The notes below the pieces were generated by a model that was not told the DNA's origin, did no database searches, and saw nothing but the letters and a program-made list of their open reading frames with translations. Positions 31,303-62,362 of a stretch of DNA of 64,000 nucleotides are shown piece by piece (the stretch's first letter is position 1; every line of letters begins with the position of its first letter). The position numbers were made by a program, and so were the translations under genes. The DNA lies in the IMG/VR virus record IMGVR_UViG_3300043418_000114, positions 186,001 to 250,000 of that record. One strand, given 5' to 3'.

Positions 31303-31307
31303 CCGTT

Positions 31308-31772: not shown

Positions 31773-31781
31773 ATTTTCTCC

Positions 31782-32189: not shown

Positions 32190-32199
32190 TTTGTTTTCC

Positions 32200-33421: not shown

Positions 33422-33450
33422 ATTATATAACCAATTCCATTTAATGTCAA
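33422..33450 (-). promoter_or_regulatory. sigma70-type early promoter (repeat family)
   Basis: TTGACA-TTAAATGGAATTGGTTA-TATAAT. Confidence 0.8.
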
Positions 33451-35135: not shown

Positions 35136-35136
35136 A

Positions 35137-36273: not shown

Positions 36274-37695
36274 TTACGACAAGTCGTAACGTGTCTTCAT
36301 CACTGTCTTCAACATGACGGCTTCTGGTGTGAAGTCTTCCAAGTCGTTAGACAATACAGAAGTTGCTAGTGCTGGGCTAAAGCCTGACACTAGTGCAGTA
36401 CCACTCTTATCGAATGACACTGGTGTGTTACCGTAACTTGCGTTCAAGTTCCAGAAGACAACTTTTGGAAGTGCGTAGCCTGCGGCTTCGTACTTACGTG
36501 CGATCATTTGCATCGCGGTGTCGTCATGCTTAACACATTGGTTAAATTGCATGTCTGAGAAGATAACAAGAGTTTCAGGCATTTCTGCTTGTGGAACACT
36601 GTTTTCTGTCGCAGTCTTCAGGATCTTTTCAAACGCCTTGTGAAGGTCTGTACTCATATCCCAGTTAGACTTGACCATTTGGTCAATCTTTTGGTTGATG
36701 TTACCCTTTAGGTGCATCAATTCTGGCTTGCTTGAGAAGGTCAAGAAGGTATCTTTGAACTTACCCTTGTTCTTATCAGCAAAGTACAAACCTAGGCTAA
36801 CAGCAACTTCCATGCAAGACAGGTTGCTCTTAGAGCCATGACCACCTGCTGGACAAGACATTGAACCAGAAACGTCAACCAGAGGAAGAACGTTTGCATC
36901 GCCAACGTAGTTAGGCATTGCTTCCCATTGCTTTTGGATCAAGTCAGTTTCAGTCTTGTTAAACTGCATCCAACCACCAATACGACCCTTCAGTACGTCA
37001 TATGGGAACACTGCGCCTGCGTTAACCTTAACACCAGCTTCGCCCTTAACGAGCTTAGTTACATATTCAGCGTATGTAGTACCATGACGGCCAAACGCTT
37101 TCTTGTAACGTGCATGTGCCACTGAAGGAACATGTGAGTAGTTGATGTTATCCCAATTTTGGGCACACATTTGTGTTTCAACAACATTAGTAAGGCCGAC
37201 TAGGCTCTTACGATATTGTTTAGGGGTCATTCCGAAGAATTGACGGATTTCACGTGCTACTTCACCTTTACGTGGAGTCCACTTAGCCGCAAGACCGTTA
37301 CCTGCACGTAGTGCATCGCCGAGCATAGTGTATGCCTTGGCCTTCACAGGCTGAGTCTTAAACACTAGCAAGTCGTCGTAACGACCCAATTCTGGAATCT
37401 TAGCCATCAAACGCATTGCGTCTTCTGGGTTAGTCTTTTCCAAGTGAACGAGGATGTCTCGGAAGACTTGACGTTCACCTGAACCACCACGTGCATCACG
37501 TGCCCATTGAGCGATACGCAATGCAAGATCAGAGTTCTCTACATAAGCCGCTGTGAAAGCCGGCACGATGTTTTTACCACGGCTTGCACCGATGTTGTAA
37601 AACAAATCAACACATGCGTTAGCACTTGATTTGCGAGCCTTCATACCATTGGTGGTACGAGTTGATTGATTCTTAACTGCTTCTGCGAATTGCAT
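36274..37695 (-). CDS. DUF2828-like TROVE/Ro-related protein with C-terminal vWA (MIDAS) domain
   Basis: 'ARD.RGG.GER', 'G.YDDL', 'AAKW.PR', DVSGS MIDAS, 'SDMQF', 'VFWNL', 'VSGFS'. Confidence 0.8.
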   Translation of the reverse strand: MQFAEAVKNQSTRTTNGMKARKSSANACVDLFYNIGASRGKNIVPAFTAAYVENSDLALRIAQWARDARGGSGERQVFRDILVHLEKTNPEDAMRLMAKIPELGRYDDLLVFKTQPVKAKAYTMLGDALRAGNGLAAKWTPRKGEVAREIRQFFGMTPKQYRKSLVGLTNVVETQMCAQNWDNINYSHVPSVAHARYKKAFGRHGTTYAEYVTKLVKGEAGVKVNAGAVFPYDVLKGRIGGWMQFNKTETDLIQKQWEAMPNYVGDANVLPLVDVSGSMSCPAGGHGSKSNLSCMEVAVSLGLYFADKNKGKFKDTFLTFSSKPELMHLKGNINQKIDQMVKSNWDMSTDLHKAFEKILKTATENSVPQAEMPETLVIFSDMQFNQCVKHDDTAMQMIARKYEAAGYALPKVVFWNLNASYGNTPVSFDKSGTALVSGFSPALATSVLSNDLEDFTPEAVMLKTVMKTRYDLS

Positions 37696-37722: not shown

Positions 37723-37786
37723 AACAGGATGCGCTTTTAGTTTCATCTATGAATTGAAATTTTAAAGTTTGCTGAATGCATCCTAA
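37723..37786 (-). ncRNA. CAGCA-scaffold RNA copy 1
   Basis: TAGGATGC-ATT-CAGCA...hairpin...GCATCCTG; promoter at 37793-37821. Confidence 0.8.
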
Positions 37787-37838: not shown

Positions 37839-37992
37839 AAACAGGATCGTTGTTGACTGCTTTTTGAATAGGGCCATCACTCCTATTGCGATAGATGCAT
37901 TTCAATAACTACCTTCAAAGTCCGTAGACTCCAGTAGTTACCATGCGATCCATCAGTTCCAATAAAGTAAATTATTGCTGTACCGATCCTAA
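37839..37992 (-). ncRNA. CAGCA-scaffold RNA copy 2 (multi-stem insert)
   Basis: TAGGATCG-GTA-CAGCA...CGATCCTG. Confidence 0.75.
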
Positions 37993-40490: not shown

Positions 40491-40610
40491 AACAGGTTCT
40501 CTTTTTTCGTGCTACCACTACACCAACGCGAAGACCAACTCGCGCCTGGGATTCGAACCCAGCCCCTCTTTTTTACAGAAAGATTATTAAGATTGCTGAA
40601 AAGAACCTAA
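40491..40610 (-). ncRNA. CAGCA-scaffold RNA copy 4, enclosing a circularly permuted tRNA-Tyr(GTA)-like domain
   Basis: TAGGTTCT-TTT-CAGCA, anticodon arm TCTTT-CTGTAAA-AAAGA, T arm, closed acceptor, D arm, AGAACCTG. Confidence 0.85.
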
Positions 40611-41200: not shown

Positions 41201-42079
41201 TGGAGCACTGAGAATACATGCTTACCGAGTAACACCTCAGACATTATTACAATCCTTGCGAGACTGCTTTCTTCTGACTTCCACTGCAACCTCTTGCGAG
41301 TATCACAGTCTGTTACCAACATCGCCGTTTTAAGTCAGGCATTAGACTTGACGCTGTATGCTATTCTACGCTTTCTATCCCGTTGACCTTTAGAGCCATT
41401 CACTACCGCTAAGTAGTTACGAAACTTCCTGCATAAACAGATTTCACCTTGCGAGTTACGTCTGACTGGATTATCTTGCGACTCCAGTATTAGATGCTTT
41501 TCACATACAACCGAGACAGACTTTGCTTTTTTAATCGATAGAAGGGATCGAACCTTCAGCCGACTGCTTGAAAATGCAGTTGATCTACCATTGATCTATA
41601 TCAACCTACTGTGATGTGCTGTCTCAGTTGCTTCATAATCTTTTGGACTACAAAATACAACACGCCACGTACCTTTTGTCTCGCGGACTACTCAGTCGTC
41701 TTTCACGATTAATGTCGGGTCTCGGCTTTCGCGTACCTCCATCAACCATTCAAACTGCATTACAACTCTTAGATGCGACTCCTCGAATCATAACACTACC
41801 CTTTCTCATACCAATTAACTGGACTGGTTTTGTCGTGAGGTCAGCACCACCTGTTACTCTCTAATGACTTGCGTTACCCTCGATATTATCTCAGGCGCTT
41901 AAGCCACTAATTCTTTCCACAACTTCCAGCGTCATTGTTATCACCACCGGTCTTATCAGTGATGAAACCCTCGCGGGTTTGAGCAGGCTTGCTTAGATGA
42001 ACTATTTCTAGCGCGGGTCTGTAGGAGACTACCGCTTTGGGCCGATCACTCGGCTTATTCTAATGAGGCTAAGCCCCCA
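41201..42079 (-). ncRNA. GOLLD-like giant structured RNA with an embedded tRNA-Glu-like domain
   Basis: About 880 nt without a credible ORF; many GCAA/GNRA-capped stems; ends GCATGTATTCTCAGTGCTCCA; tRNA-cluster context; cloverleaf at 41533-41605. Confidence 0.65.
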
Positions 42080-42204: not shown

Positions 42205-42309
42205 TTTCTTAACATTGTTGAACATACTAGTGCATTTCCAAATTATGCTACTCCTCATCAGGGATGGAATCGAACCAACATCCCTAATACATTCAACAAT
42301 GCTAAGAAA
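42205..42309 (-). ncRNA. YrlA-topology tRNA-mimic RNA
   Basis: About 25-bp stem enclosing T loop TTCGATT, a short closed acceptor hairpin, then D arm TAGCATAATTTGGAAATGC. Confidence 0.6.
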
Positions 42310-42949: not shown

Positions 42950-43010
42950 AACAGGATGCTTATTTTTCAATTAAAAGTTGAATTATAAGATGTTGCTGGA
43001 CGCATCCTAA
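42950..43010 (-). ncRNA. CAGCA-scaffold RNA copy 5, with a bare Lys(TTT) anticodon stem-loop
   Basis: TAGGATGC-GTC-CAGCA...TTCAA-CTTTTAA-TTGAA...GCATCCTG. Confidence 0.85.
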
Positions 43011-45227: not shown

Positions 45228-45656
45228 TTATTTGTTTTTGCCACACCAAGTGTCAGTCTGTGAATGACAATTGGGACAGAGTAATCTTAAGTTTTTAAAC
45301 TTGTGATTGTGATTATCGCCGTCTATGTGATCTAAATGTAGAGAAATTTCTTTTCCCATCCATTCTTCTAATCCACACGACGAGCATTTGTTATCTAATA
45401 TTTTTTCTTTTAACAAACGCTTTTTCAGTTTTAGTGTTTGATATGTAGGATGCAATCCTTCTAGAATTTCATTCAACTCTATCTTCTTTGCACCACCACC
45501 TATCTTAAAATCTAAACCTAATCTTTTTGCTCTACGCCAAACTGTAACATCTGGCACATTAAAATAATGTGCTAACTTGCTCAAGACTGGCGTAATGTTA
45601 TACTGTTCTATCAATTCAGTATCTGTAAACTTTTCTGTACTATGTTTTTGTTTCAT
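45228..45656 (-). CDS. HNH endonuclease
   Basis: CxxC...LHLDHIDGD..N....NLRLLCPNCH. Confidence 0.88.
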   Translation of the reverse strand: MKQKHSTEKFTDTELIEQYNITPVLSKLAHYFNVPDVTVWRRAKRLGLDFKIGGGAKKIELNEILEGLHPTYQTLKLKKRLLKEKILDNKCSSCGLEEWMGKEISLHLDHIDGDNHNHKFKNLRLLCPNCHSQTDTWCGKNK

Positions 45657-47310: not shown

Positions 47311-47871
47311 CTACGAAAGCAAGATTCTAGAATGCTTTGGCACACCTGCCATCAAGTATTCCATTTGGTCTGCAAGAATTGTTCGTTGTTGCAGAATCAT
47401 GTTTTCATAGTGGTTAGGTTCATAAGGAACATAAAGTAGTTCCATACGTGCTTCTTTCAAAGACTTATGACCCTTCTTAGAGTTACATTCCTTACATGCA
47501 GTAACTACGTTCATCCAAGTGTTGTCGCCGCCATGGTACCGAGGTACAATGTGGTCACGGCTTAGATTGTGATAGTTAGGGAAATGTCCACCACAGTATG
47601 CACAAACATACCGGTCACGACCAAACAATGTCTTGTTAGTCAATGCAACATGTGCGTGACGATGTGGGTTATAACCATGACCCTTGATAGCAATAATAGA
47701 AGGAGATTCTAGGTAGCTTAGTGATCCGTCACGTTGTACGCCACCACGATACTTCGCAACAATTTCACCCATAGACCATGCTACGGAGTCAGTTGCGTGA
47801 TATGCAATTGCGTCATCGTTTGAGATCCATTGCCGGGGAACTCCTGAAATATCTAGTGCTAGAACAGCCAT
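47311..47871 (-). CDS. HNH endonuclease (McrA-like)
   Basis: RD..VCAYCG...DHIVP...GG..TW.NVVTACKECN. Confidence 0.88.
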   Translation of the reverse strand: MAVLALDISGVPRQWISNDDAIAYHATDSVAWSMGEIVAKYRGGVQRDGSLSYLESPSIIAIKGHGYNPHRHAHVALTNKTLFGRDRYVCAYCGGHFPNYHNLSRDHIVPRYHGGDNTWMNVVTACKECNSKKGHKSLKEARMELLYVPYEPNHYENMILQQRTILADQMEYLMAGVPKHSRILLS

Positions 47872-48577: not shown

Positions 48578-48676
48578 TGGTGCCTCTGGCAGGACTCGAA
48601 CCTGCACACTGTGGCTTATCTAGCCACTGCTTTGGGGAGGTATAAGCTCCCTTCTTTACCATTAAGCTACAGAGGC
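48578..48676 (-). tRNA. tRNA with TAT anticodon (Ile AUA) and about 29-nt variable region
   Basis: GGGAG-CTTATAC-CTCCC; V hairpin GTGGCT-AGATA-AGCCAC; A73; CCA. Confidence 0.75.
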
Positions 48677-50561: not shown

Positions 50562-50819
50562 TGGCTTCGTTAGCAAGACTCGAACTTGCGATAGTGGCTT
50601 CAAATCGCGTATGCTGGGTGCCACCGTGTTTCCCAAAGTTACCCTCGTATCCCCTCTGCTAGTTTATCTCACTTTTCTCACATTTCGACCTGTTCCGCAC
50701 TTCCCGGACTCACAGTGTTTGGTTTTAAAGCCTACGCGATTGTTATCTACTTTGTTTTACTAGTTGCCTTATTAATAGCATACTCAATACTACTCTACCT
50801 TCCTCTACACTATAACGAA
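50562..50819 (-). ncRNA. About 258-nt RNA with tRNA acceptor, T arm and a large internal domain
   Basis: TTCGTTA/TAACGAA-G-CCA; T arm GCAAG-TTCGAGT-CTTGC; internal AATCGCGTA/TACGCGATT. Confidence 0.6.
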
Positions 50820-50826
50820 ATAAAAT

Positions 50827-50907: not shown

Positions 50908-51447
50908 TCATTTTACAACATCTTGCCAACGAATGACTAGTGATTTGTCGTAATTTTGAGTTTTGTTCTTTCTGCGATTTTCCAATGCAGGAAGATACTG
51001 AAAGTTATCAGGATGATGTAGACCTCCGCATGCCAATGGCACAATATGGTCGACTTCGTATCCAGTTGGACAACTCTCGTAAATTTTTCGAATTAACTGA
51101 CTATCAACGTAATCAGGTGTTGCGTTGTACTTTCTCGCTCTATAGTTTTGTACATTCAACACATTTAATTTTGCAGATTCGTCTTTCGTTTTTCTTCCAA
51201 CTTTATCCCAATAAGCTATTCTAGCCTCTGATATTTTGGCAGAATGTTCTGCTGTTCTCGGCTTAAGTTTCTTTCCTTTGGTACTGGTTTGCTTAATTGA
51301 ACCAGAAGCAATTCCTTCTTTAACCGAGTTGGCTATTTTTCGTTTCGTTTCATCGGATCTAACTCTAGAGTTAGCACACGGTCTACAACAATACTTTCCT
51401 GATCCATATGATCCATCATGTTCACTATTACATTTGAGGCAAAACAT
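50908..51447 (-). CDS. HNH homing-endonuclease-like protein
   Basis: N-terminal Cys motifs; NUMOD-like basic helices; 'EVDHIVPL..GGLH...N.QYL...ENRRK'. Confidence 0.82.
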   Translation of the reverse strand: MFCLKCNSEHDGSYGSGKYCCRPCANSRVRSDETKRKIANSVKEGIASGSIKQTSTKGKKLKPRTAEHSAKISEARIAYWDKVGRKTKDESAKLNVLNVQNYRARKYNATPDYVDSQLIRKIYESCPTGYEVDHIVPLACGGLHHPDNFQYLPALENRRKNKTQNYDKSLVIRWQDVVK

Positions 51448-51908: not shown

Positions 51909-52022
51909 AACAGGATACATTCTTGACGAATGCTCTACCAATTGAGCTAATCTCGCATGAAGCGAAATGTTGGAATCGAACCAACGACACATCGTTTGAT
52001 GTAGTTTGCTGTATGTATCCTA
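51909..52022 (-). ncRNA. CAGCA-scaffold RNA copy 6, with a permuted T-acceptor-D tRNA mimic
   Basis: TAGGATAC-ATA-CAGCA, tetraloop hairpin, GTTGG-TTCGATT-CCAAC, closed acceptor, TAGCTCAATTGGTAGAGC, GTATCCTG. Confidence 0.85.
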
Positions 52023-52026
52023 AAAT

Positions 52027-52146
52027 TGGCGCCGCCGGAGGGATTCGAACCCCCATCTCTTCCTTGACATGGAATTTTTATATGCTGAACGTACTCTGTA
52101 CAGAGTCACTTTTTATAAGTGTCCTGATCCATTAGACGACAGCGGC
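52027..52146 (-). tRNA. tRNA-Asp(GTC)-like gene with a permuted CAGCA scaffold inserted between the D and anticodon arms
   Basis: GCCGCTG/CGGCGGC-G-CCA; insert ...ACTCTGT-AC-AGAGTAC-GTT-CAGCA-TATAAAAA; TTCC-ATGTCAA-GGAA. Confidence 0.75.
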
Positions 52147-52510: not shown

Positions 52511-52571
52511 AACAGGATGCGTTTTTGCTTTTTACCAATAAAAGTTTTTTTAATTGCTGAATGCATCCTAA
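52511..52571 (-). ncRNA. CAGCA-scaffold RNA copy 7
   Basis: TAGGATGC-ATT-CAGCA...CTTTT-ATTGGTA-AAAAG...GCATCCTG. Confidence 0.8.
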
Positions 52572-52621: not shown

Positions 52622-53275
52622 TTACTTTTTAGGATAAACATACAGTTTTTGCAAGTCTGGTCTTTCAGGTTCTAACCACTCGCCTTTCTTGCACATAGCA
52701 ATGATGCTTTTTGGGCATCCTGCTAACTCTAATTGTGTATAAGAACTAAGTCCTCTACCTTGAATTTTAGGTTGCATATGACATGGCTGAGGAACTTCTC
52801 TCCAATAACCGGTGCCATTGTCTACACCTGATGCAATGTAGTTAGTGTATTCTGCTTTGATACCAGGACGAAAATAAATTGTCAAGCCACGATCAGGTGT
52901 TTCATACACTCTAGGACCATCAACAAATATTTCTGCCATGTCTAAGCATGTCATTACAGCAGTAGGTCGCTGTAGATGATCTAACCTTGTGCCATCAGGG
53001 CATGCACCGTTGTCTAACTCAGTTTTATCGCCGTTAGGCAACTCCATGAACTCGCCATGCTGAGTTTTGAATTCACCGAACAAGTCTTGGTAATTCTCAC
53101 TGATCCAGTATTTCTCGCGTGTCCAATCTTCATCCCTATCGATGGTAGTAGTCACACCTTTAAACACTTTAATATAGCCACTATCGCCGCCATCAAGTGC
53201 TTCATAAGATAATTCTTTATTGACTGTTAATGTCAATTTCTTTGTATTGTAATCATAAATCCATGGTAAAATCAT
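52622..53275 (-). CDS. Hypothetical protein
   Basis: 217 aa; ATAAATA and GGAG upstream. Confidence 0.65.
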   Translation of the reverse strand: MILPWIYDYNTKKLTLTVNKELSYEALDGGDSGYIKVFKGVTTTIDRDEDWTREKYWISENYQDLFGEFKTQHGEFMELPNGDKTELDNGACPDGTRLDHLQRPTAVMTCLDMAEIFVDGPRVYETPDRGLTIYFRPGIKAEYTNYIASGVDNGTGYWREVPQPCHMQPKIQGRGLSSYTQLELAGCPKSIIAMCKKGEWLEPERPDLQKLYVYPKK

Positions 53276-53399: not shown

Positions 53400-53501
53400 A
53401 ACAGGATAGTTGTTTTGCAGGGGGAATTGAACCCCCAAGGTTTGATTAGAAGTCAAATTGTGAACCGTTCACATGCGTATTGTTTGCTGTAACTATCCTA
53501 A
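53400..53501 (-). ncRNA. CAGCA-scaffold RNA copy 8, enclosing D-like, Arg(TCT) anticodon and T arms
   Basis: TAGGATAG-TTA-CAGCA...TTTGA-CTTCTAA-TCAAA, GGGGG-TTCAATT-CCCCC...CTATCCTG. Confidence 0.85.
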
Positions 53502-55791: not shown

Positions 55792-56820
55792 TCACAACAA
55801 CCATCGTTGATTCTTCATTGTCCACTCTACAACATCACGAAGTTTATCTTGAAATGTGTACTTTGGTTTCCAACCCAACGATGCCAGATACTCTCCTGAC
55901 AAACTGTAGCGAAAATCATGACCAGGTCGTTGACTATCATTTCCAGTGATTTGATATTGTAGCGTCTTGTTCATCACTGTAGCAATCATTTTGGCAACTG
56001 CTAGATTACTAAATTCCTCATTTGCTGTGATGTTGAATTTAGGACAGGTGATGCCTTCTGTGTTGGATGGCAATGAAAACTGCTTGTGTGGCAGATTCAT
56101 AATGAACAATGTGGCTAGAGCCACGTCTTCTACATAGATCCAATGACGTAGTCCACTCACTGTGCCAGTACTATCGCCATGAATTGTAACAACTTCATCG
56201 TTCGATAACTTATTCATCACTAAACCAATGAACTTTTCTGGATTCTGTCTCTCGCCGAACGTGTTCATAACGTGTAGGCAGTATATTGGCATGCCATACG
56301 TATTCTCATATGCTACGCACAGTTCTTCTGCCGCGGCCTTACTTGCACTATATGGACTACGACTGTTATATCTGTCGTATTCGTTGAAATTTACACCAGC
56401 TGGAGCACTTCCAAAAATCTCATCCGTCCCAAAATAGATGAACTTTTCTAGATTAGGAAGATGATGCCTTGCATATTCCAATAGGTTACATGTGCCTACC
56501 ACGTTGTCTTGAATGAATTGAACTGGATTTTGTATGCTTCTGTCAACGTGACTACCCGCGGCTAGGTGAATAATATAGTCAACGTTGCCTAGTTGTTTGG
56601 CTAGCTGAGGATTAATTTCTGCACGAAGATCATGGTAGATTACTCTAAGATTATGATTTACTGGATCTAACTCATCGCGTATTTCGACTAATCTATTCAG
56701 ATTGCCAGAAAAATCCAGTCTATCCAGACTAGTCACCTGGTAGCCTCTCGACAATAGTTGTTTTATTAGATGATGACCAATGAATCCTGCTCCACCTGTC
56801 ACTAGTACATTTTTACCCAT
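55792..56820 (-). CDS. NDP-sugar 4,6-dehydratase (RmlB/RfbB-like)
   Basis: GGAGFIG, HLAAGSHVDRSI, TDE, YSASK, RPGHD.RY. Confidence 0.9.
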   Translation of the reverse strand: MGKNVLVTGGAGFIGHHLIKQLLSRGYQVTSLDRLDFSGNLNRLVEIRDELDPVNHNLRVIYHDLRAEINPQLAKQLGNVDYIIHLAAGSHVDRSIQNPVQFIQDNVVGTCNLLEYARHHLPNLEKFIYFGTDEIFGSAPAGVNFNEYDRYNSRSPYSASKAAAEELCVAYENTYGMPIYCLHVMNTFGERQNPEKFIGLVMNKLSNDEVVTIHGDSTGTVSGLRHWIYVEDVALATLFIMNLPHKQFSLPSNTEGITCPKFNITANEEFSNLAVAKMIATVMNKTLQYQITGNDSQRPGHDFRYSLSGEYLASLGWKPKYTFQDKLRDVVEWTMKNQRWLL

Positions 56821-56861
56821 CCAGTATTTATAGACAAGGTTCCTTCAGAATAAATATCAAC

Positions 56862-57764
56862 ATGGACATACTGACTATTACATGCGACCGCGACTTCGAT
56901 ATCATGGAGTCTCACGCCAAAAGCATTCAACGTTTTTTGGCACCATGTAAGCATTGGGTTTTCGTAAATCAGTCAAAACGCTCACGCCAAGACTGGATGG
57001 AAATGCTAGAGCCATATTACACAAGGCATGAACTAGAAATTGTCTTCACCGATGACATAGAATCATTTGGTGACTTGAATGGTTGGATCGTTCAACAGAT
57101 ATGGAAGATACGTGCAGTAGATTGGATCAAAAAGGATTACGTTGTTTTTGATTCTAAAAACATATTTGTGCGTGACACTGACGTTGGCACATGGACTCAT
57201 GAAGGACCTGGTGTGTTTGGATACTTACCCGACACTGAGCAGAAGCCAGATGATCCTGACTTTGATTTAACTATCAACTACATTCTGTCTGCCAGAGATT
57301 GCTATGTAAAGTACTATAATTTACCAGCAATTAAAAAGACTATGAACATTATCACGCCATTCGTAGTGCGTGAAAAAGTAATGTCTGAGTTGTCAGCTAT
57401 GATCAAAAAGAATAACGTGTTTGTAGACGTACCAATCGACGACAAGGTTATATGGCATGGTGACTTTTTGCTATACAGTATGGTAGCAGAAAAATATGGA
57501 CTACTAGACACTGAACCTGACTTCCATCTTCCAGGCGATGTTACTAGTAAATCTGTATTCTATCATCATTCAGAATGGGAACAAGATGCATACAAGAGTG
57601 GGTTTGATAGATTACGCAACAATGAAAACTATGCGTGTTTGAGTCTACATCATACCTGGTTAGCGAATGCTTCAATGAATGAGCGTGTGGAAATGGCAGA
57701 GTTCTTAGAGCAATTGGATGTGCTACCAGAACGATTAAAAAAACAAATATTGAGAATAAAATGA
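56862..57764 (+). CDS. Glycosyltransferase-like protein (DUF6492-like)
   Basis: 'GW..QQ.WK...Y.V.DSKN.F'. Confidence 0.55.
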   Translation: MDILTITCDRDFDIMESHAKSIQRFLAPCKHWVFVNQSKRSRQDWMEMLEPYYTRHELEIVFTDDIESFGDLNGWIVQQIWKIRAVDWIKKDYVVFDSKNIFVRDTDVGTWTHEGPGVFGYLPDTEQKPDDPDFDLTINYILSARDCYVKYYNLPAIKKTMNIITPFVVREKVMSELSAMIKKNNVFVDVPIDDKVIWHGDFLLYSMVAEKYGLLDTEPDFHLPGDVTSKSVFYHHSEWEQDAYKSGFDRLRNNENYACLSLHHTWLANASMNERVEMAEFLEQLDVLPERLKKQILRIK

Positions 57765-58537
57765 GACATGAACAAACTAAATTAGACAATCATATTCTTT
57801 TTGCAATTCAGTTACTGAGTTATGCCTCCATTCCATTGATGTTCATGTATGCTACTATTGGACAATGGATTATTGCCAGTATCATGTGTTTCTTGTTATA
57901 TCACGTTGGTGTTGCAGTTACATTCCATCGTTTGTTAACTCATAATTCGTTCAGCACAGGTCCAATCACTAAAGTGGTGATGACAATCTTAGGCACATTA
58001 GCTACTAATGGCAGTTCATTGTACTGGGTTGCACTGCACACAACACATCACAAGTATTCAGATAGTGATAAAGACGTTCACAGTCCACGCTTTGGCTTCT
58101 GGAAGACTTGGTTCATGCCTATGTATCCACATAGCCCAGTTGACTCTACTAAGCTAGCTATCCGTTTAGCTAAAGAGCCATTGCAATTGTTCTTACACAA
58201 GTACTATTGGTTCGTTATTGCCGCATATGTTCTAATGTTGTATGTCATTAGTCCATTCGCTATCGTATATGCTTACTTGTTCCCTGTAATGTTCTCATGG
58301 GCAATGTCAGCAGGCATCGTCAACACACTATGCCATGTTCGTGGATATCGCAATCACGAGACTAAAGACAATTCAACAAACATTCGTTGGTTCTCTTGGA
58401 TCACAAACGGTGAAAGCTATCATAACAATCATCACGCTAGACCAAGCAGTGCTAATTTTGGTAGCGATACCGAGTACGACCCAGGCTACTCGTTTATCAA
58501 GTTGTTAGCAAAGTTGAAACTGGCAACCTTAAAATGA
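57761..58537 (+). CDS. Delta-9-type membrane fatty acid desaturase
   Basis: His boxes HRLLTH, HTTHH and HNNHH; TM segments. Confidence 0.92.
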   Translation: MRHEQTKLDNHILFAIQLLSYASIPLMFMYATIGQWIIASIMCFLLYHVGVAVTFHRLLTHNSFSTGPITKVVMTILGTLATNGSSLYWVALHTTHHKYSDSDKDVHSPRFGFWKTWFMPMYPHSPVDSTKLAIRLAKEPLQLFLHKYYWFVIAAYVLMLYVISPFAIVYAYLFPVMFSWAMSAGIVNTLCHVRGYRNHETKDNSTNIRWFSWITNGESYHNNHHARPSSANFGSDTEYDPGYSFIKLLAKLKLATLK

Positions 58538-58851
58538 TAATTGGCAAACCTAAAGGCAAAGACCACTATACTTGTTCCTTGAGTGATAAGTATTATGAGA
58601 ATCAATGTAAGAATCCACCAGATTATTACAGTTTGTTTGACTTCCATCAAGTGCCAGATAGCTATACCTTCGTTCCTGACATAAAGAACTATGATAAATT
58701 AGAGAAAGTATGTTATCTATTTCATCACAGGCTAGTTCAGTATTATATTGATCACAATTTAGATCCTGATACCCCGTGGTGGTGGTATGATGACAAAGAG
58801 TTACATGCATTAGCAGATAGGCTAGCACAAAGAATAAAGGACACACTATGA
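58534..58851 (+). CDS. Hypothetical protein
   Basis: Coupled ORF in operon. Confidence 0.55.
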   Translation: MIIGKPKGKDHYTCSLSDKYYENQCKNPPDYYSLFDFHQVPDSYTFVPDIKNYDKLEKVCYLFHHRLVQYYIDHNLDPDTPWWWYDDKELHALADRLAQRIKDTL

Positions 58852-59672
58852 GTACTAAACGAATTTCACACAAAAACACGCCAATGGTCATGCGTATTCC
58901 ATTGCCAGCATCACTAGCACAATTGCAAAAAGAAACACTAGATTTGATTGCTAAACCAAAAGAAGAACGCCGTAGAGTTGACAATGATTCAACATTCGCC
59001 GCACTTGACGCAGGCGAAGAAGGCAAGTACTCAGTCTATTCGAATGATGGCATCGATATGCAAGGCACGACTGGTGAAAAGTTTGAGTACAACGTTGCAT
59101 CGTTCTTTGAAATGAATGACAAAGCCAAGCAATGGGTAGCTGACAATGGCGGCCATCGTCGTGTTATCAGTCCACTAAATCGCTATCGTGGCTACATGAA
59201 TCCTTGGGTCAGTGAGTACTGGGATCCAGGACTAGACGAGCGTGTGTTTGACAAGCCAACTGAGTTGAACGTTGGTATCTTTAAAGAACTAAACGATTGG
59301 TTCAGTAACAAAGGCTATAGTGTTCGTCGTAGTGCTTTAGTCAGAGTTATGCCGCACCAATTCTTGAGTCCCCACGTTGACACTGGTCCTGATTTTATCG
59401 TTCGATTCCAAATCCCAGTTATTCACAATGACAAAGCGGTAATGGGTTTCAGAAAGTCTAAGACTGATCCATGGACAGTATTCAACTTCGAACCAGGTTA
59501 CATCTATGCTGTTAACTCAGGACTAGAACATTTTGCACGTAACGATGGCGACGATGACCGAGTTCAATTCCGTATCTGTGTTGAAGAATACAATGTATTA
59601 GAAGAACTAGGTTTCGAAGAATGGAATCAAGCCATGACTTGGGAAGATTGGGAAACACCCAAGTATGACTGA
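58848..59672 (+). CDS. 2OG-Fe(II) oxygenase (Asp/Asn beta-hydroxylase-like)
   Basis: 'PHVD...RFQIP...N.GLEH.A.N.G..DR'. Confidence 0.7.
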   Translation: MSTKRISHKNTPMVMRIPLPASLAQLQKETLDLIAKPKEERRRVDNDSTFAALDAGEEGKYSVYSNDGIDMQGTTGEKFEYNVASFFEMNDKAKQWVADNGGHRRVISPLNRYRGYMNPWVSEYWDPGLDERVFDKPTELNVGIFKELNDWFSNKGYSVRRSALVRVMPHQFLSPHVDTGPDFIVRFQIPVIHNDKAVMGFRKSKTDPWTVFNFEPGYIYAVNSGLEHFARNDGDDDRVQFRICVEEYNVLEELGFEEWNQAMTWEDWETPKYD

Positions 59673-60303
59673 TTGCTATCAAAGTCATGGTAGCGTTGAC
59701 GAACAAATTGTACTTGAGTTGCACAAATATCTAGACAGTATTTTTCCTCAAGAGATTCGTAATAGTTATCCATTGTCTGAGAATGTGTATTACACATTCC
59801 ACATGAAATACTTGTTTGACAAAAGCGTACCATTGGACATGGACGCATTGTCGTGGTATGGCGATGGTGAACGCACAGTTGACTTGATATATGATATGCA
59901 TCCCTTGAAGATTTACAAGGTCATTGAATCAGTTAGACGAGGGGTAATTGATATCATCGCTGTGGTAGATGATGCGCCTGGTAATGAGACCTTCAAAGAA
60001 TTCATCGGGGCCATGGAAGAAAAAATGGGTCGCAAAGTCCTGAAGGTTGCATTCAGTGTGTGTGGCGAAGGCCATAGAATTAAAATACACAAAGACTTTT
60101 CTGTTAAATACGACAACAAACTTCACTTAGTTATTAAGAACGGTGGAGTTAGTTCGCTTGTATGGTACGACGACAATTTCAAAGAACTTGCTAGATGTAA
60201 TGGGCAAAGTGGTGAATTGTTCTATTTTGAGGGTGACAAATACTTTCACCGTTTTGATAGACCAAAGAGCGAACGCATACATCTAATTATGTGCTTTGAA
60301 TGA
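59665..60303 (+). CDS. Putative 2OG-Fe(II) oxygenase
   Basis: 'IHKD...LHL...FH...RIHLI'. Confidence 0.55.
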   Translation: MTDCYQSHGSVDEQIVLELHKYLDSIFPQEIRNSYPLSENVYYTFHMKYLFDKSVPLDMDALSWYGDGERTVDLIYDMHPLKIYKVIESVRRGVIDIIAVVDDAPGNETFKEFIGAMEEKMGRKVLKVAFSVCGEGHRIKIHKDFSVKYDNKLHLVIKNGGVSSLVWYDDNFKELARCNGQSGELFYFEGDKYFHRFDRPKSERIHLIMCFE

Positions 60304-61718
60304 AACAGGTTGACTTTCTAATAATTGGCGCAGGCCTTGCTGGAATTGGTGCGGCAGTTCACTTCCAAAAACAATACCCAAACAAAACTTTTGCTATCGT
60401 AGAGAAACGTGGTAGTATTGGTGGCACATGGGATGTGTTCAAGTACCCAGGTGTTCGTTCAGATAGCGACATGTTTACACTGGGTTACAGTTTCAAACCG
60501 TGGACTGGTAGTTACTATGCCACAGGACAAGAGATTAACAACTACATCAAAGAAACTGCCCAAGAATACAACATTACACAACACATCCATTTCAACACTA
60601 CAGCTAGTGGCTTAGAATGGCAAGACAATCAATGGACTCTATATACTAACAACGATATGTTCGTTGCCAAATTCGTATTGTTTGCTACCGGTTACATCAA
60701 CCACGAACGTTCACACTTCCCATTCATCAAGAACCACAATAGTTTTAAAGGCAAAATCATTCATACTCAGTACTGGGATAGTGACATAGACTATACAGAC
60801 AAGAAAATAGTCGTGATTGGCAGTGGGGCTACTGCATACACATTAGTGCCAGAACTTGCAAAGACAGCAAAACACGTGACTATGATACAGCGTAGTCCTA
60901 GCTATGTACGCAGTGAAGAACGTAACCCTGAATGGTTAAAAGACATTCGTAAAGAACTATCAGACCCACAAGAGATTCATGACAAGGTTAGATTGTACAG
61001 CACTCATATACAGCACAATCAATTTCACAATAGCAGACAAAGACCTGAAGTAATGAAACGGTTGCTTATTAACGATGTTAAGAAACAACTGGATCCAACT
61101 GTTGATATTAAACACTTCACTCCAAACTACATGCCATGGGACCAGCGTATCTGCAAGATTATTGACAATGATTTCATTCAGACTGTCAATAGTGGCACAG
61201 TTTCAATCGAGACTGACACGATTGAATCGTTTACGGTGAACACCGTTGTATTATCATCTGGCAAAGAAGTTGAAGCTGACATTATTGTTATGGCAACTGG
61301 ATTCAAGACTCGCATGATGGGAGATATCTCTATCAAAGTCGATGACGTTGACAAAGATTATACCAAACTAAAAGCATACAAAGGAACAATGATTGAAGAC
61401 TTGCCTAACTTAGGCTATATATTTGGGTATGCCAGCATGTCATGGACGTTGAAGTTAGAACTAGCACTGTCATTCTATTCACGTGTATTTGATTACATGG
61501 ATAAAAACAACTATTCAGTGTTTGTACCATTTGATGAAAACACAGTTGAGTCTGGCACAGGCTTTATTGATTTGAGTGCAAACTTCTATACACGCAGTGA
61601 AGATAAATTCCCTAGACAAGGTGTTGAGTTACCTTGGCAAAACACAAACAATATCGTAGTCGATAAGACTATGTTATTAGAAGACCCAATAGATGATGGA
61701 GTATTGAAATTCAAATGA
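60300..61718 (+). CDS. Flavin monooxygenase (Baeyer-Villiger/EthA-like)
   Basis: GAGLAG, GGTWD.FKYPG.RSD, FKGKIIHTQYW, GSGATA, ATG. Confidence 0.92.
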   Translation: MKQVDFLIIGAGLAGIGAAVHFQKQYPNKTFAIVEKRGSIGGTWDVFKYPGVRSDSDMFTLGYSFKPWTGSYYATGQEINNYIKETAQEYNITQHIHFNTTASGLEWQDNQWTLYTNNDMFVAKFVLFATGYINHERSHFPFIKNHNSFKGKIIHTQYWDSDIDYTDKKIVVIGSGATAYTLVPELAKTAKHVTMIQRSPSYVRSEERNPEWLKDIRKELSDPQEIHDKVRLYSTHIQHNQFHNSRQRPEVMKRLLINDVKKQLDPTVDIKHFTPNYMPWDQRICKIIDNDFIQTVNSGTVSIETDTIESFTVNTVVLSSGKEVEADIIVMATGFKTRMMGDISIKVDDVDKDYTKLKAYKGTMIEDLPNLGYIFGYASMSWTLKLELALSFYSRVFDYMDKNNYSVFVPFDENTVESGTGFIDLSANFYTRSEDKFPRQGVELPWQNTNNIVVDKTMLLEDPIDDGVLKFK

Positions 61719-62362
61719 GAGCTTGGACTAAATTCGAACACGGTAATGAAGTACACGAACACATGCTAGATGAGTTTTTAAAGACTCCTGGCATGCCTGA
61801 ACACATGTCAAGTAGAGAAGGCATTAAGATTGCAAAGTTCCAAGAGCATCCTGCTAGTGAGTTCTATATGCTAGTTGTTAGTGGCAAGATGGTAGGATGC
61901 TGTGGCTTCTATGTGTTGCATGATGACAATGGCATATTGTACTGCAAGAGCCCATATCGTTTATACATTTTACCTGAAGGCAATGGTGCATACACTGCTA
62001 ATCGTACCAGTTGGGAAAACATCAGTAGAGATTGGCTAAGTCGTTGGCCTGATATTCCATTCTTGGCAACAGTAAATGTAGGCAATGAAAAGATATTGTA
62101 TTATGAGATTCTTGGCATGCAACGATATACTGACAGATTGCCACTAGATGATCCATTCAGACAAAATCAAAAGTCATTCTACTTGCATCCCAAATTAGTC
62201 AAAGAAATGTACACGTGGCAATATGCATGGTATACCACTAACTATGTTGGATTTCAACGTGAAGAAATGGACATGGATGTTGAAGTCAAGAAACAAATTG
62301 AAGACTACTGGGCTAAAGGATATTGGCTTGGCAAGGGCAACACTGACAGGACAACAGTATGA
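61715..62362 (+). CDS. Hypothetical protein (possibly GNAT-like)
   Basis: Coupled ORF; 'G.MVGC.G...RLYILPE'. Confidence 0.45.
   Translation: MRAWTKFEHGNEVHEHMLDEFLKTPGMPEHMSSREGIKIAKFQEHPASEFYMLVVSGKMVGCCGFYVLHDDNGILYCKSPYRLYILPEGNGAYTANRTSWENISRDWLSRWPDIPFLATVNVGNEKILYYEILGMQRYTDRLPLDDPFRQNQKSFYLHPKLVKEMYTWQYAWYTTNYVGFQREEMDMDVEVKKQIEDYWAKGYWLGKGNTDRTTV

What the first reader, a model, noticed from the sequence alone, without database searches (positions are those of the whole stretch)
52027..52146. tRNA-Asp with the CAGCA scaffold inserted, in permuted form, at the same D/anticodon junction
This is a normal-order tRNA with G73, CCA and a GUC loop. It carries a ~45-nt insert reading A-rich linker, ACTCTGT-AC-AGAGTAC-GTT-CAGCA, A-rich linker. 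That is the scaffold's 3' strand followed by its 5' strand, closed as a hairpin. It is the circular permutation of copy 40491-40610, which argues that scaffold-plus-tRNA is a selected 3D architecture. This copy may be chargeable while bound to protein (inference).
Basis: seen in the sequence. Interest (0 to 1): 0.8.

Follow-up and report, generated by a model that had tools for sequence, protein, structure and literature searches.

The report
tRNA carrying a Ro60-protein docking arm
A jumbo phage encodes a complete tRNA with a conserved fifth arm that looks like the docking site for the phage's own Ro60-like protein, so a whole tRNA seems to be used as the working end of a Y-RNA-type particle, probably in the fight over tRNA cleavage and repair.

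Summary
Window 52027-52146 (minus strand) is a 120-nt RNA. Removing 45 nt between tRNA positions 26 and 27 leaves a textbook 75-nt tRNA-Asp(GUC) with G73 and CCA.

The insert is the closed, strand-swapped form of a module (5' AGGAU..U.CAGCAA ... A-rich ..AUCCUGUU 3'). That module frames 7 other small RNAs in the window and 264 distinct ones in related phages.

Sixty-one viral stretches (52 distinct), plus cultured Cronobacter, Citrobacter and Aeromonas phages, carry the same five-armed tRNA. Base-pair covariation supports every helix.

The module sits within 650 nt upstream of a DUF2828 gene in 45 of 46 loci. That protein's predicted fold matches Ro60 proteins, so the RNA is best read as a Y-RNA-class partner whose tethered module is an entire tRNA.

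The anticodon triplet is among the fastest-changing positions. The discriminator does not track it, 8 of 41 loops have 8-9 nt, and this phage has two ordinary tRNA-Asp genes. Conserved Asp decoding is therefore unlikely.

Sister RNAs display bare anticodon-stem-loop mimics, and the neighbouring genes suggest RNA repair. I infer a bait, decoy or repair-platform role. Binding, charging and insert retention remain untested.

The parts
52027..52146 (-). Five-armed tRNA (120 nt): a complete class-I tRNA body plus the docking arm
   Evidence: Hand parse. Covariance model R1 scores it 119 bits against 40 or less for all ordinary tRNAs in the window. ARAGORN calls tRNA-Asp(gtc) after deletion of the insert.
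52140..52146 (-). Acceptor stem, 5' strand (GCCGCUG)
   Evidence: It pairs with 52031-52037. All 7 pairs show double compensatory changes in 41 homologs.
52121..52137 (-). D arm (GUCU-AAUGGAUCA-GGAC), followed by A26 at 52120
   Evidence: 4-bp stem, 99.4% of cells paired, 3 of 4 pairs with double changes. U8, A14 and the GG of the loop are conserved.
52075..52119 (-). 45-nt insert, the fifth arm: a permuted (closed) copy of the CAGCAA/CUGUU module
   Evidence: Same site in all homologs. Its consensus matches the canonical module strand for strand.
52110..52114 (-). A-rich tract (AAAAA) 5' of the arm's distal helix. It corresponds to the A-rich tract that precedes the 3' strand in canonical copies.
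   Evidence: A fraction 0.62 (permuted) and 0.58 (canonical) against 0.31 background.
52091..52109 (-). Distal hairpin GU(G)ACUCU-GUAC-AGAGUAC: a 7-bp helix with one bulged base and a 4-nt loop
   Evidence: Predicted independently by RNAalifold and 100% paired. The two positions left free by the search pattern covary: AUCCU/AGGAU, ACUCU/AGAGU, AUUCU/AGAAU, and in cultured phages AAACU/AGUUU and UAUACU/AGUAU.
52083..52087 (-). CAGCA motif, the signature of the module's 5' strand
   Evidence: Same register (10 nt after the AG that opens the helix) as in the 7 canonical copies.
52060..52074 (-). Anticodon arm UUCC-AUGUCAA-GGAA, with anticodon GUC at 52066-52068
   Evidence: The triplet columns rank 2nd-4th of 130 for evolutionary change, while U33 and A37/A38 are conserved. 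It is topologically equivalent to the hairpin after CAGCAA in YrlA-type copies.
52038..52054 (-). T arm GGGGG-UUCGAAU-CCCUC
   Evidence: 100% paired, 4 of 5 pairs with double changes. GUUCRA is invariant.
52027..52037 (-). Acceptor 3' strand (52031-52037), discriminator G73 (52030) and encoded CCA (52027-52029)
   Evidence: CCA is encoded in 33 of 41 homologs. N73 is A in 23 and G in 16.
51909..52021 (-). Canonical-module YrlA-type RNA starting 5 nt after the candidate's CCA: module 5' strand, hairpin, T arm, closed acceptor-like hairpin, D arm, module 3' strand
   Evidence: Rfam YrlA 31.3 bits (below the gathering score of 69). Fold z = -4.7. The same tandem order occurs in Cronobacter phage S13 and about 10 of 53 loci.
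52511..52569 (-). Short canonical module RNA (59 nt) just after a terminator-like hairpin
53400..53499 (-). Canonical module RNA with an anticodon-stem-loop mimic (UUUGA-CUUCUAA-UCAAA) and a T arm
42950..43008 (-). Short canonical module RNA displaying a Lys-like anticodon-stem-loop mimic (UUCAA-CUUUUAA-UUGAA)
40491..40608 (-).
   Evidence: Fold z = -3.1, with a 7-bp/7-nt-loop hairpin, T arm, closed hairpin and D arm. Homologs in L002, L004, L005 and L008.
37839..37990 (-). 152-nt canonical module RNA with a large module of unknown structure, upstream of the Ro60-like gene
37723..37784 (-). 62-nt canonical module RNA forming the 5' leader of the Ro60-like mRNA. A TTGACA-17-TACAAT promoter-like site lies just upstream, and the start codon is 27 nt downstream.
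   Evidence: Conserved in relatives.
36274..37695 (-). DUF2828/DUF7788 protein (473 aa): a divergent Ro60-like protein with a helical TROVE-like half and a vWA half carrying an invariant MIDAS motif
   Evidence: Pfam. PHROG 850 'RNA-binding protein'. AF2 model pTM 0.76. The top four PDB fold hits are Ro60 proteins, best E 8e-9 and TM 0.51. DxSxS, T349 and D381 are invariant.

Best explanation
The locus encodes a Y-RNA-class partner of the phage's Ro60-like (DUF2828) protein, and the module tethered to the protein is a whole, open-ended tRNA.

Shown:
- The RNA is a complete tRNA cloverleaf with a conserved fifth arm between positions 26 and 27.
- The arm is the closed, circularly permuted form of the CAGCAA/A-tract/CUGUU stem module shared by hundreds of small RNAs in this phage group.
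- That module is encoded next to the Ro60-like gene, including in its 5' leader, almost without exception.
- The protein has a Ro60 fold.
- The anticodon triplet is hypervariable inside a conserved loop frame.
- Sister RNAs on the same module display bare anticodon-stem-loop mimics.

Inferred:
- The Ro60-like ring docks on the arm (stem plus the CAGCAA/A-rich internal loop). The tRNA body is cut out of the array transcript by RNase P and 3' processing like its neighbours, and keeps an L-shape with a free CCA end.
- The particle presents a tRNA, and especially its anticodon loop, to anticodon-directed factors. It would act as a bait or decoy for host anticodon nucleases, or as a platform that holds a tRNA for the adjacent healing and sealing enzymes.
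- It is not primarily a decoder of Asp codons.

Confidence by layer: about 0.97 for the conserved five-armed architecture, about 0.7 for the arm being the docking site of the Ro60-like protein, and about 0.35 for the bait/decoy/repair role. The single figure given is for the statement as a whole.
For: Architecture and conservation:
- 61 viral stretches (52 distinct), all in a tRNA frame.
- RNAalifold recovers the cloverleaf plus the extra hairpin.
- 97.9% of cells are paired against 41-52% in slid controls, and 19 of 27 pairs show double changes.
- Model R1 separates members (78-137 bits) from ordinary tRNAs (40 or less).

Module identity:
- Canonical and permuted consensus sequences match on both strands.
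- 7 copies in the window against 0.05 expected.

Link to the protein:
- A complete module lies within 650 nt upstream of the gene in 45 of 46 loci, against 4.5% of control segments.
- One copy is the mRNA leader.
- The link persists at 43-44% protein identity in Cronobacter phage S13 and Aeromonas phage APT65, where 2-3 five-armed tRNAs and canonical modules flank the gene.

Ro60 fold.

Precedent: Y RNAs are encoded beside Ro60 genes, with tRNA-like modules in either order (PMC4201824). Phage phiLo Ro60 binds two Y-like RNAs encoded upstream of its gene (PMC12135203).

Against a decoding role:
- The anticodon columns show 13-14 parsimony changes against a mean of 3.8.
- L060, L097 and L100 are near-identical but carry GUC, UCU and GUU.
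- N73 does not track the anticodon, and 8-9-nt loops occur in 8 of 41.
- The window has two ordinary tRNA-Asp(GUC) genes.

Anticodon display: 81 of 264 canonical modules carry an anticodon-stem-loop mimic against about 7 expected. One series has an identical stem with six different triplets.

Context: RF-1/GGQ protein, PTP-SAK phosphatase, YqeY, P-loop kinase and RnlA-like ligase lie within 9 kb. TROVE proteins in jumbo phages have been placed in RNA repair (PMC7824862).
Against: - No binding data exist. The docking of the protein on the arm rests on gene adjacency and analogy.
- The module's motif (CAGCAA) is not the Ro60-binding motif known from bacteria and phiLo (GNCGAA / CGAA). The protein has no sequence-level hit to TROVE or to any solved Ro60.
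- The bait/repair function is inference only, and no anticodon nuclease is identified.
- The tRNA body, acceptor stem and CCA are under strong constraint, which would also fit a real, charged tRNA. The window's copy has GUC plus G73.
- Hypervariability of the triplet is also what relaxed constraint would give.
- The RNA-run evidence for retention of the insert is weak. One unspliced contig lies in a metatranscriptome that may contain DNA.
- A basal helix that would make the insert an autonomous arm is present only in some clades.
Confidence: 0.6

Rival explanations
1. It is a working tRNA-Asp that decodes GAY codons. The fifth arm is a handle through which the Ro60-like protein protects, stores or regulates it.
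For: - The tRNA body is perfect once the insert is removed.
- GUC with G73 and G10 is in place.
- CCA is encoded in 33 of 41 homologs, and the acceptor stem is strictly maintained by compensatory change.
- U33 and A37/A38 are conserved.
Against: - The triplet changes between close relatives without matching changes in N73 or the rest of the loop.
- 20% of homologs have 8-9-nt loops.
- Position 38 is A, whereas the phage's and typical bacterial tRNA-Asp have C or other anticodon-matched residues.
- Two conventional tRNA-Asp genes are already present.
- Whether an arm plus a ~53-kDa protein at the D/anticodon hinge fits synthetase, EF-Tu and ribosome is unknown.
Confidence: 0.15
2. The 45 nt are an intervening sequence that is removed (an intron or processing cassette). 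This would yield an ordinary tRNA and perhaps a free small hairpin RNA that binds the protein.
For: Precise removal restores a canonical 75-nt tRNA with correct 26/27 spacing. Archaeal tRNAs can carry introns at non-canonical sites (PMC4090602, title and abstract only).
Against: - No bulge-helix-bulge can form in general. A helix joining the two insert ends exists only in some clades, and where present it is 5-6 bp without 3-nt bulges.
- 45 nt is too short for a group I core.
- No joint skipping the insert appears in any of four runs, and one RNA-library contig crosses it intact.
- The same module works as a terminal stem in hundreds of stand-alone RNAs, where nothing is excised.
Confidence: 0.07
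3. The CAGCAA/CUGUU module is not a protein-docking site. Instead it is an RNA-level signal, such as a processing or stability element of phage small-RNA and tRNA arrays, or a contact for another RNA such as the GOLLD RNA in the same array.
For: Modules start right after the CCA of the preceding tRNA and end in a conserved CUGUU tail, as a processing punctuation might. GOLLD lies in the same array. There is no direct evidence of protein binding.
Against: - The near-obligate position next to and inside the leader of the Ro60-like gene, kept across 43% protein identity, is what is seen for Y RNAs and Ro60 (PMC4201824, PMC12135203).
- In the permuted form the module has no free ends to be processed, yet it keeps its sequence.
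- GOLLD was not seen in the S13 or APT65 loci examined (only the annotated stretches were inspected).
Confidence: 0.1
4. It is a decaying pseudo-tRNA disrupted by a small repetitive insertion, as some GenBank annotations imply ('tRNA-Pseudo', 'tRNA-OTHER').
For: Standard finders fail on it or mis-call it. Citrobacter phage Ci1 and Cronobacter phage S13 records label it pseudo or other.
Against: Dozens of lineages keep every helix by compensatory substitution and keep the insert at one site with an invariant core. That is incompatible with decay.
Confidence: 0.01

Closest known systems
YrlA, the bacterial Y RNA with a tRNA-like domain (Rfam RF02553; Chen et al. 2014, PMC4201824)
   Same: - A small RNA encoded beside a Ro60-type gene.
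- Modular, with a protein-binding stem plus a tRNA-like part that has authentic T and D arms.
- The window's canonical copies (51909-52021, 40491-40608) have exactly the YrlA order: T arm, closed acceptor-like hairpin, D arm.
   Different: - The candidate is the circular permutation: the acceptor is open with CCA, and the protein-binding stem is closed by a loop.
- It also has a 7-nt anticodon-type loop.
- The module's motif is CAGCAA with a CUGUU tail, not GNCGAAN0-1G.
- The Rfam model scores the neighbours at 31-32 bits (gathering score 69) and does not hit the candidate at all.
Deinococcus radiodurans Yrn1 and cleaved M. smegmatis YrlA (PMC4201824)
   Same: Yrn1 has its tRNA-like parts in normal D-to-T order, showing that both permutations exist among Y RNAs. 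M. smegmatis YrlA is cut by RNase P and receives CCA, giving a Y RNA with an open acceptor end.
   Different: In Yrn1 the Ro60 stem replaces the acceptor stem. In cleaved M. smegmatis YrlA the molecule is in two pieces. Neither is a single continuous tRNA carrying the protein-binding stem as an extra arm at 26/27.
Thermus phage phiLo Ro60 with Yrl1/Yrl2 (PMC12135203; PDB 9KOP, 9L5Y)
   Same: - A phage-encoded Ro60-fold protein with its partner RNAs encoded directly upstream of the gene.
- It is the best structural match to the window's protein.
- It was proposed to hijack host RNA machinery as counter-defence.
   Different: - 15-16% sequence identity.
- phiLo Yrls are classical stem / internal loop / stem Y RNAs with a CGAA motif.
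- They are not in a tRNA array and have no tRNA host.
Class II tRNAs (long variable arm) and tmRNA
   Same: These are tRNA bodies that tolerate a large extra element while keeping the acceptor/T-arm half intact. tmRNA works with a dedicated protein partner.
   Different: The extra element here leaves from the opposite strand of the D/anticodon junction (26/27, not 44-48). It is a copy of a module used by stand-alone RNAs. I know of no described tRNA with an arm at this site (from memory and the literature searches).
Archaeal non-canonical tRNA introns (PMC4090602)
   Same: An insertion in a tRNA gene away from position 37/38 whose removal restores a normal tRNA.
   Different: There is no bulge-helix-bulge motif, no splicing endonuclease was seen in the ORFs I scanned, the setting is a phage of bacteria, and the insert is a conserved functional module elsewhere.

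Membership tests
tRNA | Cloverleaf with a 7-bp acceptor stem and D, anticodon and T arms | tested here: met
   Hand parse. RNAalifold and pair counts on 41 homologs.
tRNA | Conserved tertiary-core residues (U8, A14, G18G19, T54-Psi55-C56, A58) | tested here: met
   Invariant or nearly invariant columns in alignment A2.
tRNA | Continuous D-stem to anticodon-stem junction (one residue, 26) and a length of 70-95 nt | tested here: not met
   45 nt lie between 26 and 27 and the total is 120 nt. ARAGORN and Rfam tRNA do not call it intact.
tRNA | Anticodon conserved among orthologs and coherent with other identity elements | tested here: not met
   About 18 of 41 have GUC, with at least 10 other triplets. 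N73 does not track the anticodon. Eight of 41 have 8-9-nt loops.
tRNA | Aminoacylation and use on the ribosome | not testable with these tools
   No biochemical data.
Y RNA / YrlA | Encoded adjacent to a Ro60-type gene | tested here: met
   For the module: 45 of 46 loci within 650 nt. For five-armed tRNAs: within ~1 kb of the gene in S13 and APT65. The window's copy lies 14 kb away in the tRNA array.
Y RNA / YrlA | Protein-binding stem formed by the RNA's own 5' and 3' ends | tested here: not met
   In the candidate the ends form the acceptor stem and the module is closed by a loop. The feature is met in the 7 canonical copies.
Y RNA / YrlA | Known Ro60-binding motif (GNCGAAN0-1G / CGAA) and an Rfam RF02553 score at or above the gathering score | tested here: not met
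   The motif is CAGCAA. YrlA scores are 31-32 bits against a gathering score of 69 for the neighbours, with no hit for the candidate.
Y RNA / YrlA | Physical binding to the Ro60 protein | not testable with these tools
   Needs EMSA, RIP or cryo-EM.
Ro60 / TROVE proteins (for ORF 36274-37695) | Helical-repeat TROVE half plus a C-terminal vWA domain with MIDAS, in a Ro60-like overall fold | tested here: met
   AF2 pTM 0.76. The top four Foldseek PDB hits are full-length Ro60s: 9kop E 8e-9, 9l5y, 2nvo, 9nen. DxSxS, T and D are invariant.
Ro60 / TROVE proteins (for ORF 36274-37695) | Sequence-level membership (Pfam TROVE PF05731, or similarity to solved Ro60) | tested here: not met
   Pfam gives DUF2828 and DUF7788, with only a faint vWA_Ro60 hit at E 0.009. 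There is no PDB sequence hit.
tRNA intron (archaeal BHB type or group I) | Bulge-helix-bulge at the exon-intron junctions, or a group I catalytic core | tested here: not met
   The helix joining the insert ends is absent in most clades (median 3 bp, mean shuffle p 0.66). The insert is only 45 nt.

The most novel reading that the evidence does not exclude
Large phages use a Ro60-like ring loaded with interchangeable RNAs that display anticodon loops in three formats: a bare stem-loop, a closed tRNA mimic, or a complete CCA-ended tRNA with a docking arm. The displayed triplets evolve rapidly because they are baits matched to the anticodon-specific nucleases of each host. The particle would capture or absorb the nuclease, or hand the cut RNA to the neighbouring kinase, phosphatase and ligase. 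This would be a new RNA-protein counter-defence principle. It would also be the first natural tRNA with a dedicated protein-docking fifth arm, and it would give a function to the long-unexplained tRNA-like domain of bacterial Y RNAs.
Probability: 0.25. Interest if true: 0.92.

Novelty: new variant of a known kind. Interest (0 to 1): 0.8.

Why it matters
The purpose of the tRNA-like domain of bacterial Y RNAs has been open since 2014. Here the same protein-binding module is attached to a graded series of structures: an anticodon stem-loop, a closed tRNA mimic and a full tRNA. The displayed triplet changes fast, and the setting is an RNA-repair gene neighbourhood. That points to the anticodon loop as the business end and makes the question testable.

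The system exists in cultured phages: Cronobacter phages S13 and LPCS28, Citrobacter phage Ci1 and Aeromonas phage APT65.

It also has practical consequences:
- It defines an RNA partner for DUF2828, a very large protein family (about 7,000 relatives scored in one search, 709 phage genome records) that is currently annotated only as 'hypothetical' or 'RNA-binding'.
- It explains a recurrent mis-annotation ('tRNA-OTHER', 'tRNA-Pseudo', 121-nt 'tRNA-Ser').
- It shows that a tRNA can carry a large functional arm at the 26/27 hinge, which is of interest for tRNA engineering.

Tried and rejected
1. Anchoring on the ORFs next to the candidate (52622-53275, 50908-51447) to fetch syntenic loci gave almost only the source contig or mobile HNH-type genes.
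2. An exact gapped pattern from the candidate's D arm and anticodon arm found only the source contig. The degenerate module pattern was what worked.
3. I expected a basal helix closing the insert into an autonomous arm. It is real in some clades (GUAUAU/AUAUAC, GUAUUA/UAAUAC, GUAAA/UUUAC, GUAGA/UCUAC, and UUAUA/UAUAA in the window copy) but not general (median 3 bp, mean shuffle p 0.66). I rejected it as a defining feature.
4. I expected the tandem 'five-armed tRNA followed by a YrlA-type RNA' to be a rule. It recurs in about 10 of 53 loci, including S13, but is not universal.
5. Cellular genomes gave 15 pattern matches but no true member.
6. A sequence search of the protein against solved structures found nothing. 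Only the fold comparison revealed Ro60.
7. Rfam has no family for the module or the candidate.
8. Public RNA runs were stored as contigs, and the best run covers coding DNA evenly. They cannot settle whether the insert is retained in RNA.
9. A rigorous per-column rate test on the gene-proximal short modules was abandoned because their central hairpins are too heterogeneous to align reliably. Only the qualitative contrast (invariant module, rewritten hairpin) is reported.
10. Literature searches for DUF2828, YrlA, phage Ro60 and unusual phage tRNAs found no description of this RNA.
Full report
**Setting.** The window is part of a 364-kb freshwater jumbo-phage contig, IMGVR_UViG_3300043418_000114. 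Deposited phages share only scattered tRNA-level DNA similarity with the stretch around the candidate. On the minus strand, between about 39.6 and 54.9 kb, lies an array of 45 ARAGORN-called tRNAs. The array also holds a GOLLD RNA at 41205-41668 (203 bits). Just downstream, in minus-strand sense, is ORF 36274-37695, a DUF2828/DUF7788 protein.

**The observation.** Read on the minus strand, 52146-52027 is a 120-nt RNA. Its layout is:
- a 7-bp acceptor stem;
- U8;
- a D arm, followed by A26;
- a 45-nt insert;
- a 4-5-bp anticodon stem with the loop AUGUCAA (GUC);
- a short variable loop;
- a T arm with GUUCGAAUC;
- G73 and CCA.

Neither ARAGORN nor Rfam calls it. Rfam tRNA aligns only the 3' two-thirds, at 18.5 bits. 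Deleting the 45 nt makes ARAGORN call a standard 75-nt tRNA-Asp(gtc). In intron mode the intact sequence is mis-called as a 'tRNA-Leu with intron'.

The insert reads as follows: a short AU stretch, AAAAA, GU(G)ACUCU-GUAC-AGAGUAC, GUU, CAGCA, then an AU-rich stretch.

**What the insert is.** Seven other elements in the window, all on the minus strand, begin AGG(A/U)U-NNN-U-N-CAGCAA, where 0.05 would be expected by chance. They end ..AUCCUGUU, which pairs with their start. Most begin a few nucleotides after the CCA of the preceding tRNA.

Across the fetched loci there are 264 distinct complete elements of 50-231 nt.
- Canonical consensus: UUAGGAU...U.CAGCAA on the 5' side and AAAAA..AUCCUGUU on the 3' side.
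- Consensus of the candidate's family: AAAAAGGU.AUCCUGU, a loop, then (A)GGAUAC..UCAGCAA.

So the insert is the module's 3' strand (with its A tract), a 4-nt loop that retains the G of the CUGUU tail, and the module's 5' strand (with CAGCAA). This is the module in closed, strand-swapped form. In the window's copy the helix has drifted from AUCCU/AGGAU to ACUCU/AGAGU by two compensatory double changes.

**Conservation.** A degenerate pattern for the permuted module found 61 stretches in the viral collection, 52 of them distinct. The pattern leaves two helix positions on each strand free. Forty-three were delimited automatically as tRNA-shaped. The rest are visibly so, and they score 78-113 bits with the model.

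On a 41-sequence alignment, RNAalifold independently predicts the cloverleaf plus the extra hairpin. The pair counts are:
- 97.9% of cells are standard pairs, against 41-52% when partners are slid.
- 19 of 27 pairs have double compensatory changes.
- All 7 acceptor pairs, 3 of 4 D-stem pairs and 4 of 5 T-stem pairs covary.

The invariant arm positions were fixed by my pattern and say nothing. The free positions, however, pair in 100% of sequences.

A covariance model built from the alignment (R1) scores the candidate at 119 bits and every ordinary tRNA in the window at 40 or less. It also finds members the pattern could not see, such as a CUGCAA variant in L015 and L017.

The same pattern in 596 Gb of cellular genomes gave 15 matches. 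None is in a tRNA frame, none scores with R1, and most are non-complementary at the free positions. This serves as an empirical negative control, and it indicates that the class is phage-borne.

**Cultured phages.** The family is present in Cronobacter phages S13 and LPCS28, Citrobacter phage Ci1 (all Straboviridae) and Aeromonas phage APT65. Depositors labelled the elements 'tRNA-OTHER', a 121-nt 'tRNA-Ser' or 'tRNA-Pseudo'.

In S13 a sigma-70-like promoter is followed in tandem by two five-armed tRNAs and a canonical-module YrlA-type RNA. All of them lie just downstream of a DUF2828 homolog with 44% identity.

In APT65 four short canonical modules precede the start codon of the homolog (43% identity), and three five-armed tRNAs flank the gene. 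Their arm helices carry further complementary variants (AAACU/AGUUU, UAUACU/AGUAU, AACUCU/AGAGUU).

**Link to the protein, and what the protein is.** In 45 of 46 DUF2828 loci with enough upstream sequence, at least one complete canonical module lies within 650 nt upstream of the gene. Usually there are two or three. Control segments show this in 4.5% of cases.

In the window, one module (37723-37784) follows a TTGACA-17-TACAAT site and ends 27 nt before the start codon, so it is the leader of the protein's own mRNA.

The protein belongs to PHROG 850, 'RNA-binding protein'. About 7,000 relatives were scored in one search, and it matches 709 phage genome records. It has no sequence-level match to TROVE or to any solved structure.

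An AlphaFold2 model (pTM 0.76) has a helical N-terminal half and an alpha/beta C-terminal half. Its four best PDB matches are all full-length Ro60 proteins: Thermus phage phiLo Ro60 (E 8e-9, TM 0.51), its dimer, D. radiodurans Rsr and human Ro60. The MIDAS residues of the vWA half are invariant.

Y RNAs are characteristically encoded beside Ro60 genes, and bacterial ones carry tRNA-like domains (PMC4201824). PhiLo Ro60 binds two Y-like RNAs encoded upstream of its gene (PMC12135203). By this analogy the module is the protein's docking site. This step is inferred, not shown.

**Topology.** YrlA-type copies in the window (51909-52021, 40491-40608) run in this order: module 5' strand with CAGCAA, a hairpin, T arm, closed acceptor-like hairpin, D arm, A tract, module 3' strand.

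The candidate runs: acceptor 5' strand, D arm, A tract, module 3' strand, loop, module 5' strand with CAGCAA, GUC hairpin, T arm, acceptor 3' strand.

These are exact circular permutations of each other. In one form the acceptor is open and the module closed, and in the other the reverse. The hairpin after CAGCAA is present in 35 of 52 T-arm-bearing canonical elements and has a 7-nt loop in 12 of them. The candidate's anticodon arm therefore has a counterpart in the canonical form.

Two 3D readings remain open. Either the GUC arm stacks under the D stem as in tRNA and the module protrudes, or the module takes the anticodon-stem position (as the Ro60-binding stem does in YrlA) and the GUC arm sits like a long variable arm.

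**Is it a tRNA-Asp?** The evidence is against this as a conserved property.
- Only about 18 of 41 homologs have GUC. Others have UCU, GUU, GAU, GCC, UCC, UCG, UAU, GAC or UGU.
- Eight have 8-9-nt loops.
- L060, L097 and L100 are near-identical but carry GUC, UCU and GUU.
- On a tree built without the loop columns, the three triplet columns show 13-14 parsimony changes, ranking 2nd to 4th of 130 columns. The mean for other unpaired columns is 3.8, and the flanking loop positions show 0-6.
- In pairs at most 10% divergent elsewhere, the triplet differs three times as often per site (0.175 against 0.057).
- The discriminator follows the acceptor lineage, not the triplet.
- The window already has two ordinary tRNA-Asp(GUC) genes, with different loop frames.

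The window's own copy, with GUC and G73, may still be chargeable. That cannot be decided here.

**A clue to function.** The canonical modules often carry nothing but an anticodon-stem-loop look-alike, meaning a 5-bp stem with a 7-nt loop of form YU-NNN-RN. This is seen in 95 of 264 elements, or 81 once 14 T loops are excluded, against about 7 in shuffled modules.

Many closely resemble real anticodon arms, for example UUUGA-CUUUUAA-UCAAA, and 42950-43008 in the window carries UUCAA-CUUUUAA-UUGAA. One series has the identical stem UUUCA/UGAAA with GUA, GAA, GGA, GUC, GCA or GUU in different phages.

Among close relatives the module halves are identical while the central hairpin is rewritten. 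The five-armed tRNA thus looks like the most complete member of a graded series of anticodon-loop displays on one docking module.

Within 9 kb downstream of the Ro60-like gene lie an RF-1/GGQ-domain protein, a PTP-SAK-type phosphatase, a YqeY-like protein, a P-loop kinase and a weak RnlA-like ligase. TROVE proteins of jumbo phages have been grouped with tRNA repair systems that answer host attacks on tRNA anticodon loops (PMC7824862).

From this I infer that the particle presents tRNA anticodon loops to anticodon-directed factors, as bait, decoy or repair platform. This is the least secure step.

**Expression.** One freshwater metatranscriptome holds the region. A 726-nt contig (51653-52378) crosses the candidate with the insert intact, and no run shows a joint that skips the insert. 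However, that library covers coding regions about as evenly as the DNA run does, so carry-over of DNA is not excluded. The data are stored as contigs, which hide minor forms.

**Verdict.** The 'chargeable tRNA-Asp' idea is unproven and unlikely to be the conserved role.

Phage Ro60 homologs with Y-like, tRNA-mimicking partner RNAs are known. What is new:
- the RNA module of the DUF2828 branch;
- a continuous, CCA-ended tRNA that carries the module as a fifth arm at 26/27, as an exact permutation of the YrlA layout;
- the hypervariable displayed anticodons.

I found no description of these in the searchable literature or in Rfam.

Noticed in passing
window 41205-41668 (-), with 41532-41606: A GOLLD RNA (Rfam 203 bits) sits in the middle of the tRNA array. 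It encloses a tRNA-like element that ARAGORN reports with a four-base 'tttc' anticodon.
   Followed up: no
window 48578-48676 (-); L004:5193-5292, L008:4459-4558, L011:631-729, L030:7776-7874, L021:1958-2051, L096:596-689, L098:313-404: A second conserved family of oversized tRNAs (92-99 nt), unrelated to the docking module. It has an anticodon-type loop near UUAUAC plus a long variable arm whose 7-nt loop is itself conserved (CAGAUAA/CAGAUUA). ARAGORN calls the window copy 'tRNA-Glu(ctc)'.
   Followed up: partly
window about 50563-50822 (-): An RNA candidate of ~260 nt whose ends form a perfect 7-bp acceptor-like stem (UUCGUUA/UAACGAA). It has a T arm and GCCA at the 3' end, which makes it tmRNA-like or a tRNA with a very large insertion. 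Neither ARAGORN nor Rfam calls it. Short contigs at 50687-50755 reach depth 1,000-5,000 in the metatranscriptome against ~70 in the flanks, and 303 against 112 in the DNA run.
   Followed up: partly
window 37723-37784 (-): A copy of the docking module is the 5' leader of the Ro60-like protein's own mRNA, with a promoter-like TTGACA-17-TACAAT upstream and the AUG 27 nt downstream. This suggests autoregulation.
   Followed up: partly
window 28158-35568 (-): Gene cluster downstream of the Ro60-like gene: RF-1/GGQ domain protein (35137-35568), PTP-SAK-type phosphatase (34225-34731), marginal PdeM-like phosphoesterase (32200-32742), YqeY-like (31782-32189), AAA_33 P-loop kinase (31308-31772) and weak T4 RnlA-like ligase (28158-29075). 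The set suggests RNA healing, sealing and ribosome rescue.
   Followed up: partly
window 42206-42305 (-): A weak YrlA hit (32 bits) with a very long, perfect terminal stem (fold z = -6.4), a T arm and a D-like arm, but without the CAGCAA module. It is possibly a different class of tRNA-mimic RNA.
   Followed up: no
L104:8092-8213 (-); L128:8864-8987 (+): Variants in which the permuted module lies inside the anticodon stem, replacing or sharing the loop, rather than at 26/27. The module has therefore been grafted at more than one site in tRNA bodies, and onto different tRNA bodies (D arms of GCUC..GAGC type).
   Followed up: partly
L079:8597-8818 (-); L122:662-899 (+): Tandem pairs of five-armed tRNAs with different anticodon loops, 5-6 nt apart.
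   Followed up: no
L082, L083, L090, L103, L109, L121 (first 60 nt downstream of the five-armed tRNA): A recurrent motif GAUAGACG-N(8-10)-GAGUCCC follows the five-armed tRNA in at least six loci. It may be another small structured RNA.
   Followed up: no
window 45228-45656, 47311-47871, 50908-51447 (-): HNH / endonuclease VII-type ORFs are interspersed among the tRNA genes. They are probably mobile and make poor synteny anchors.
   Followed up: partly
L132, L135, L137, L143 (Streptomyces genomes): The search pattern hit by chance a ~100-nt region conserved in four Streptomyces genomes. The region contains CUGAUGAG followed by GAAA-like elements. It is unrelated to the phage RNA and its nature is unknown.
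   Followed up: no
window 55792-63561: Next to the tRNA array the phage carries sugar- and lipid-metabolism genes: a GDP-mannose 4,6-dehydratase-type epimerase, a fatty-acid desaturase, a flavin monooxygenase and a beta-ketoacyl synthase. This set is unusual for a phage.
   Followed up: no
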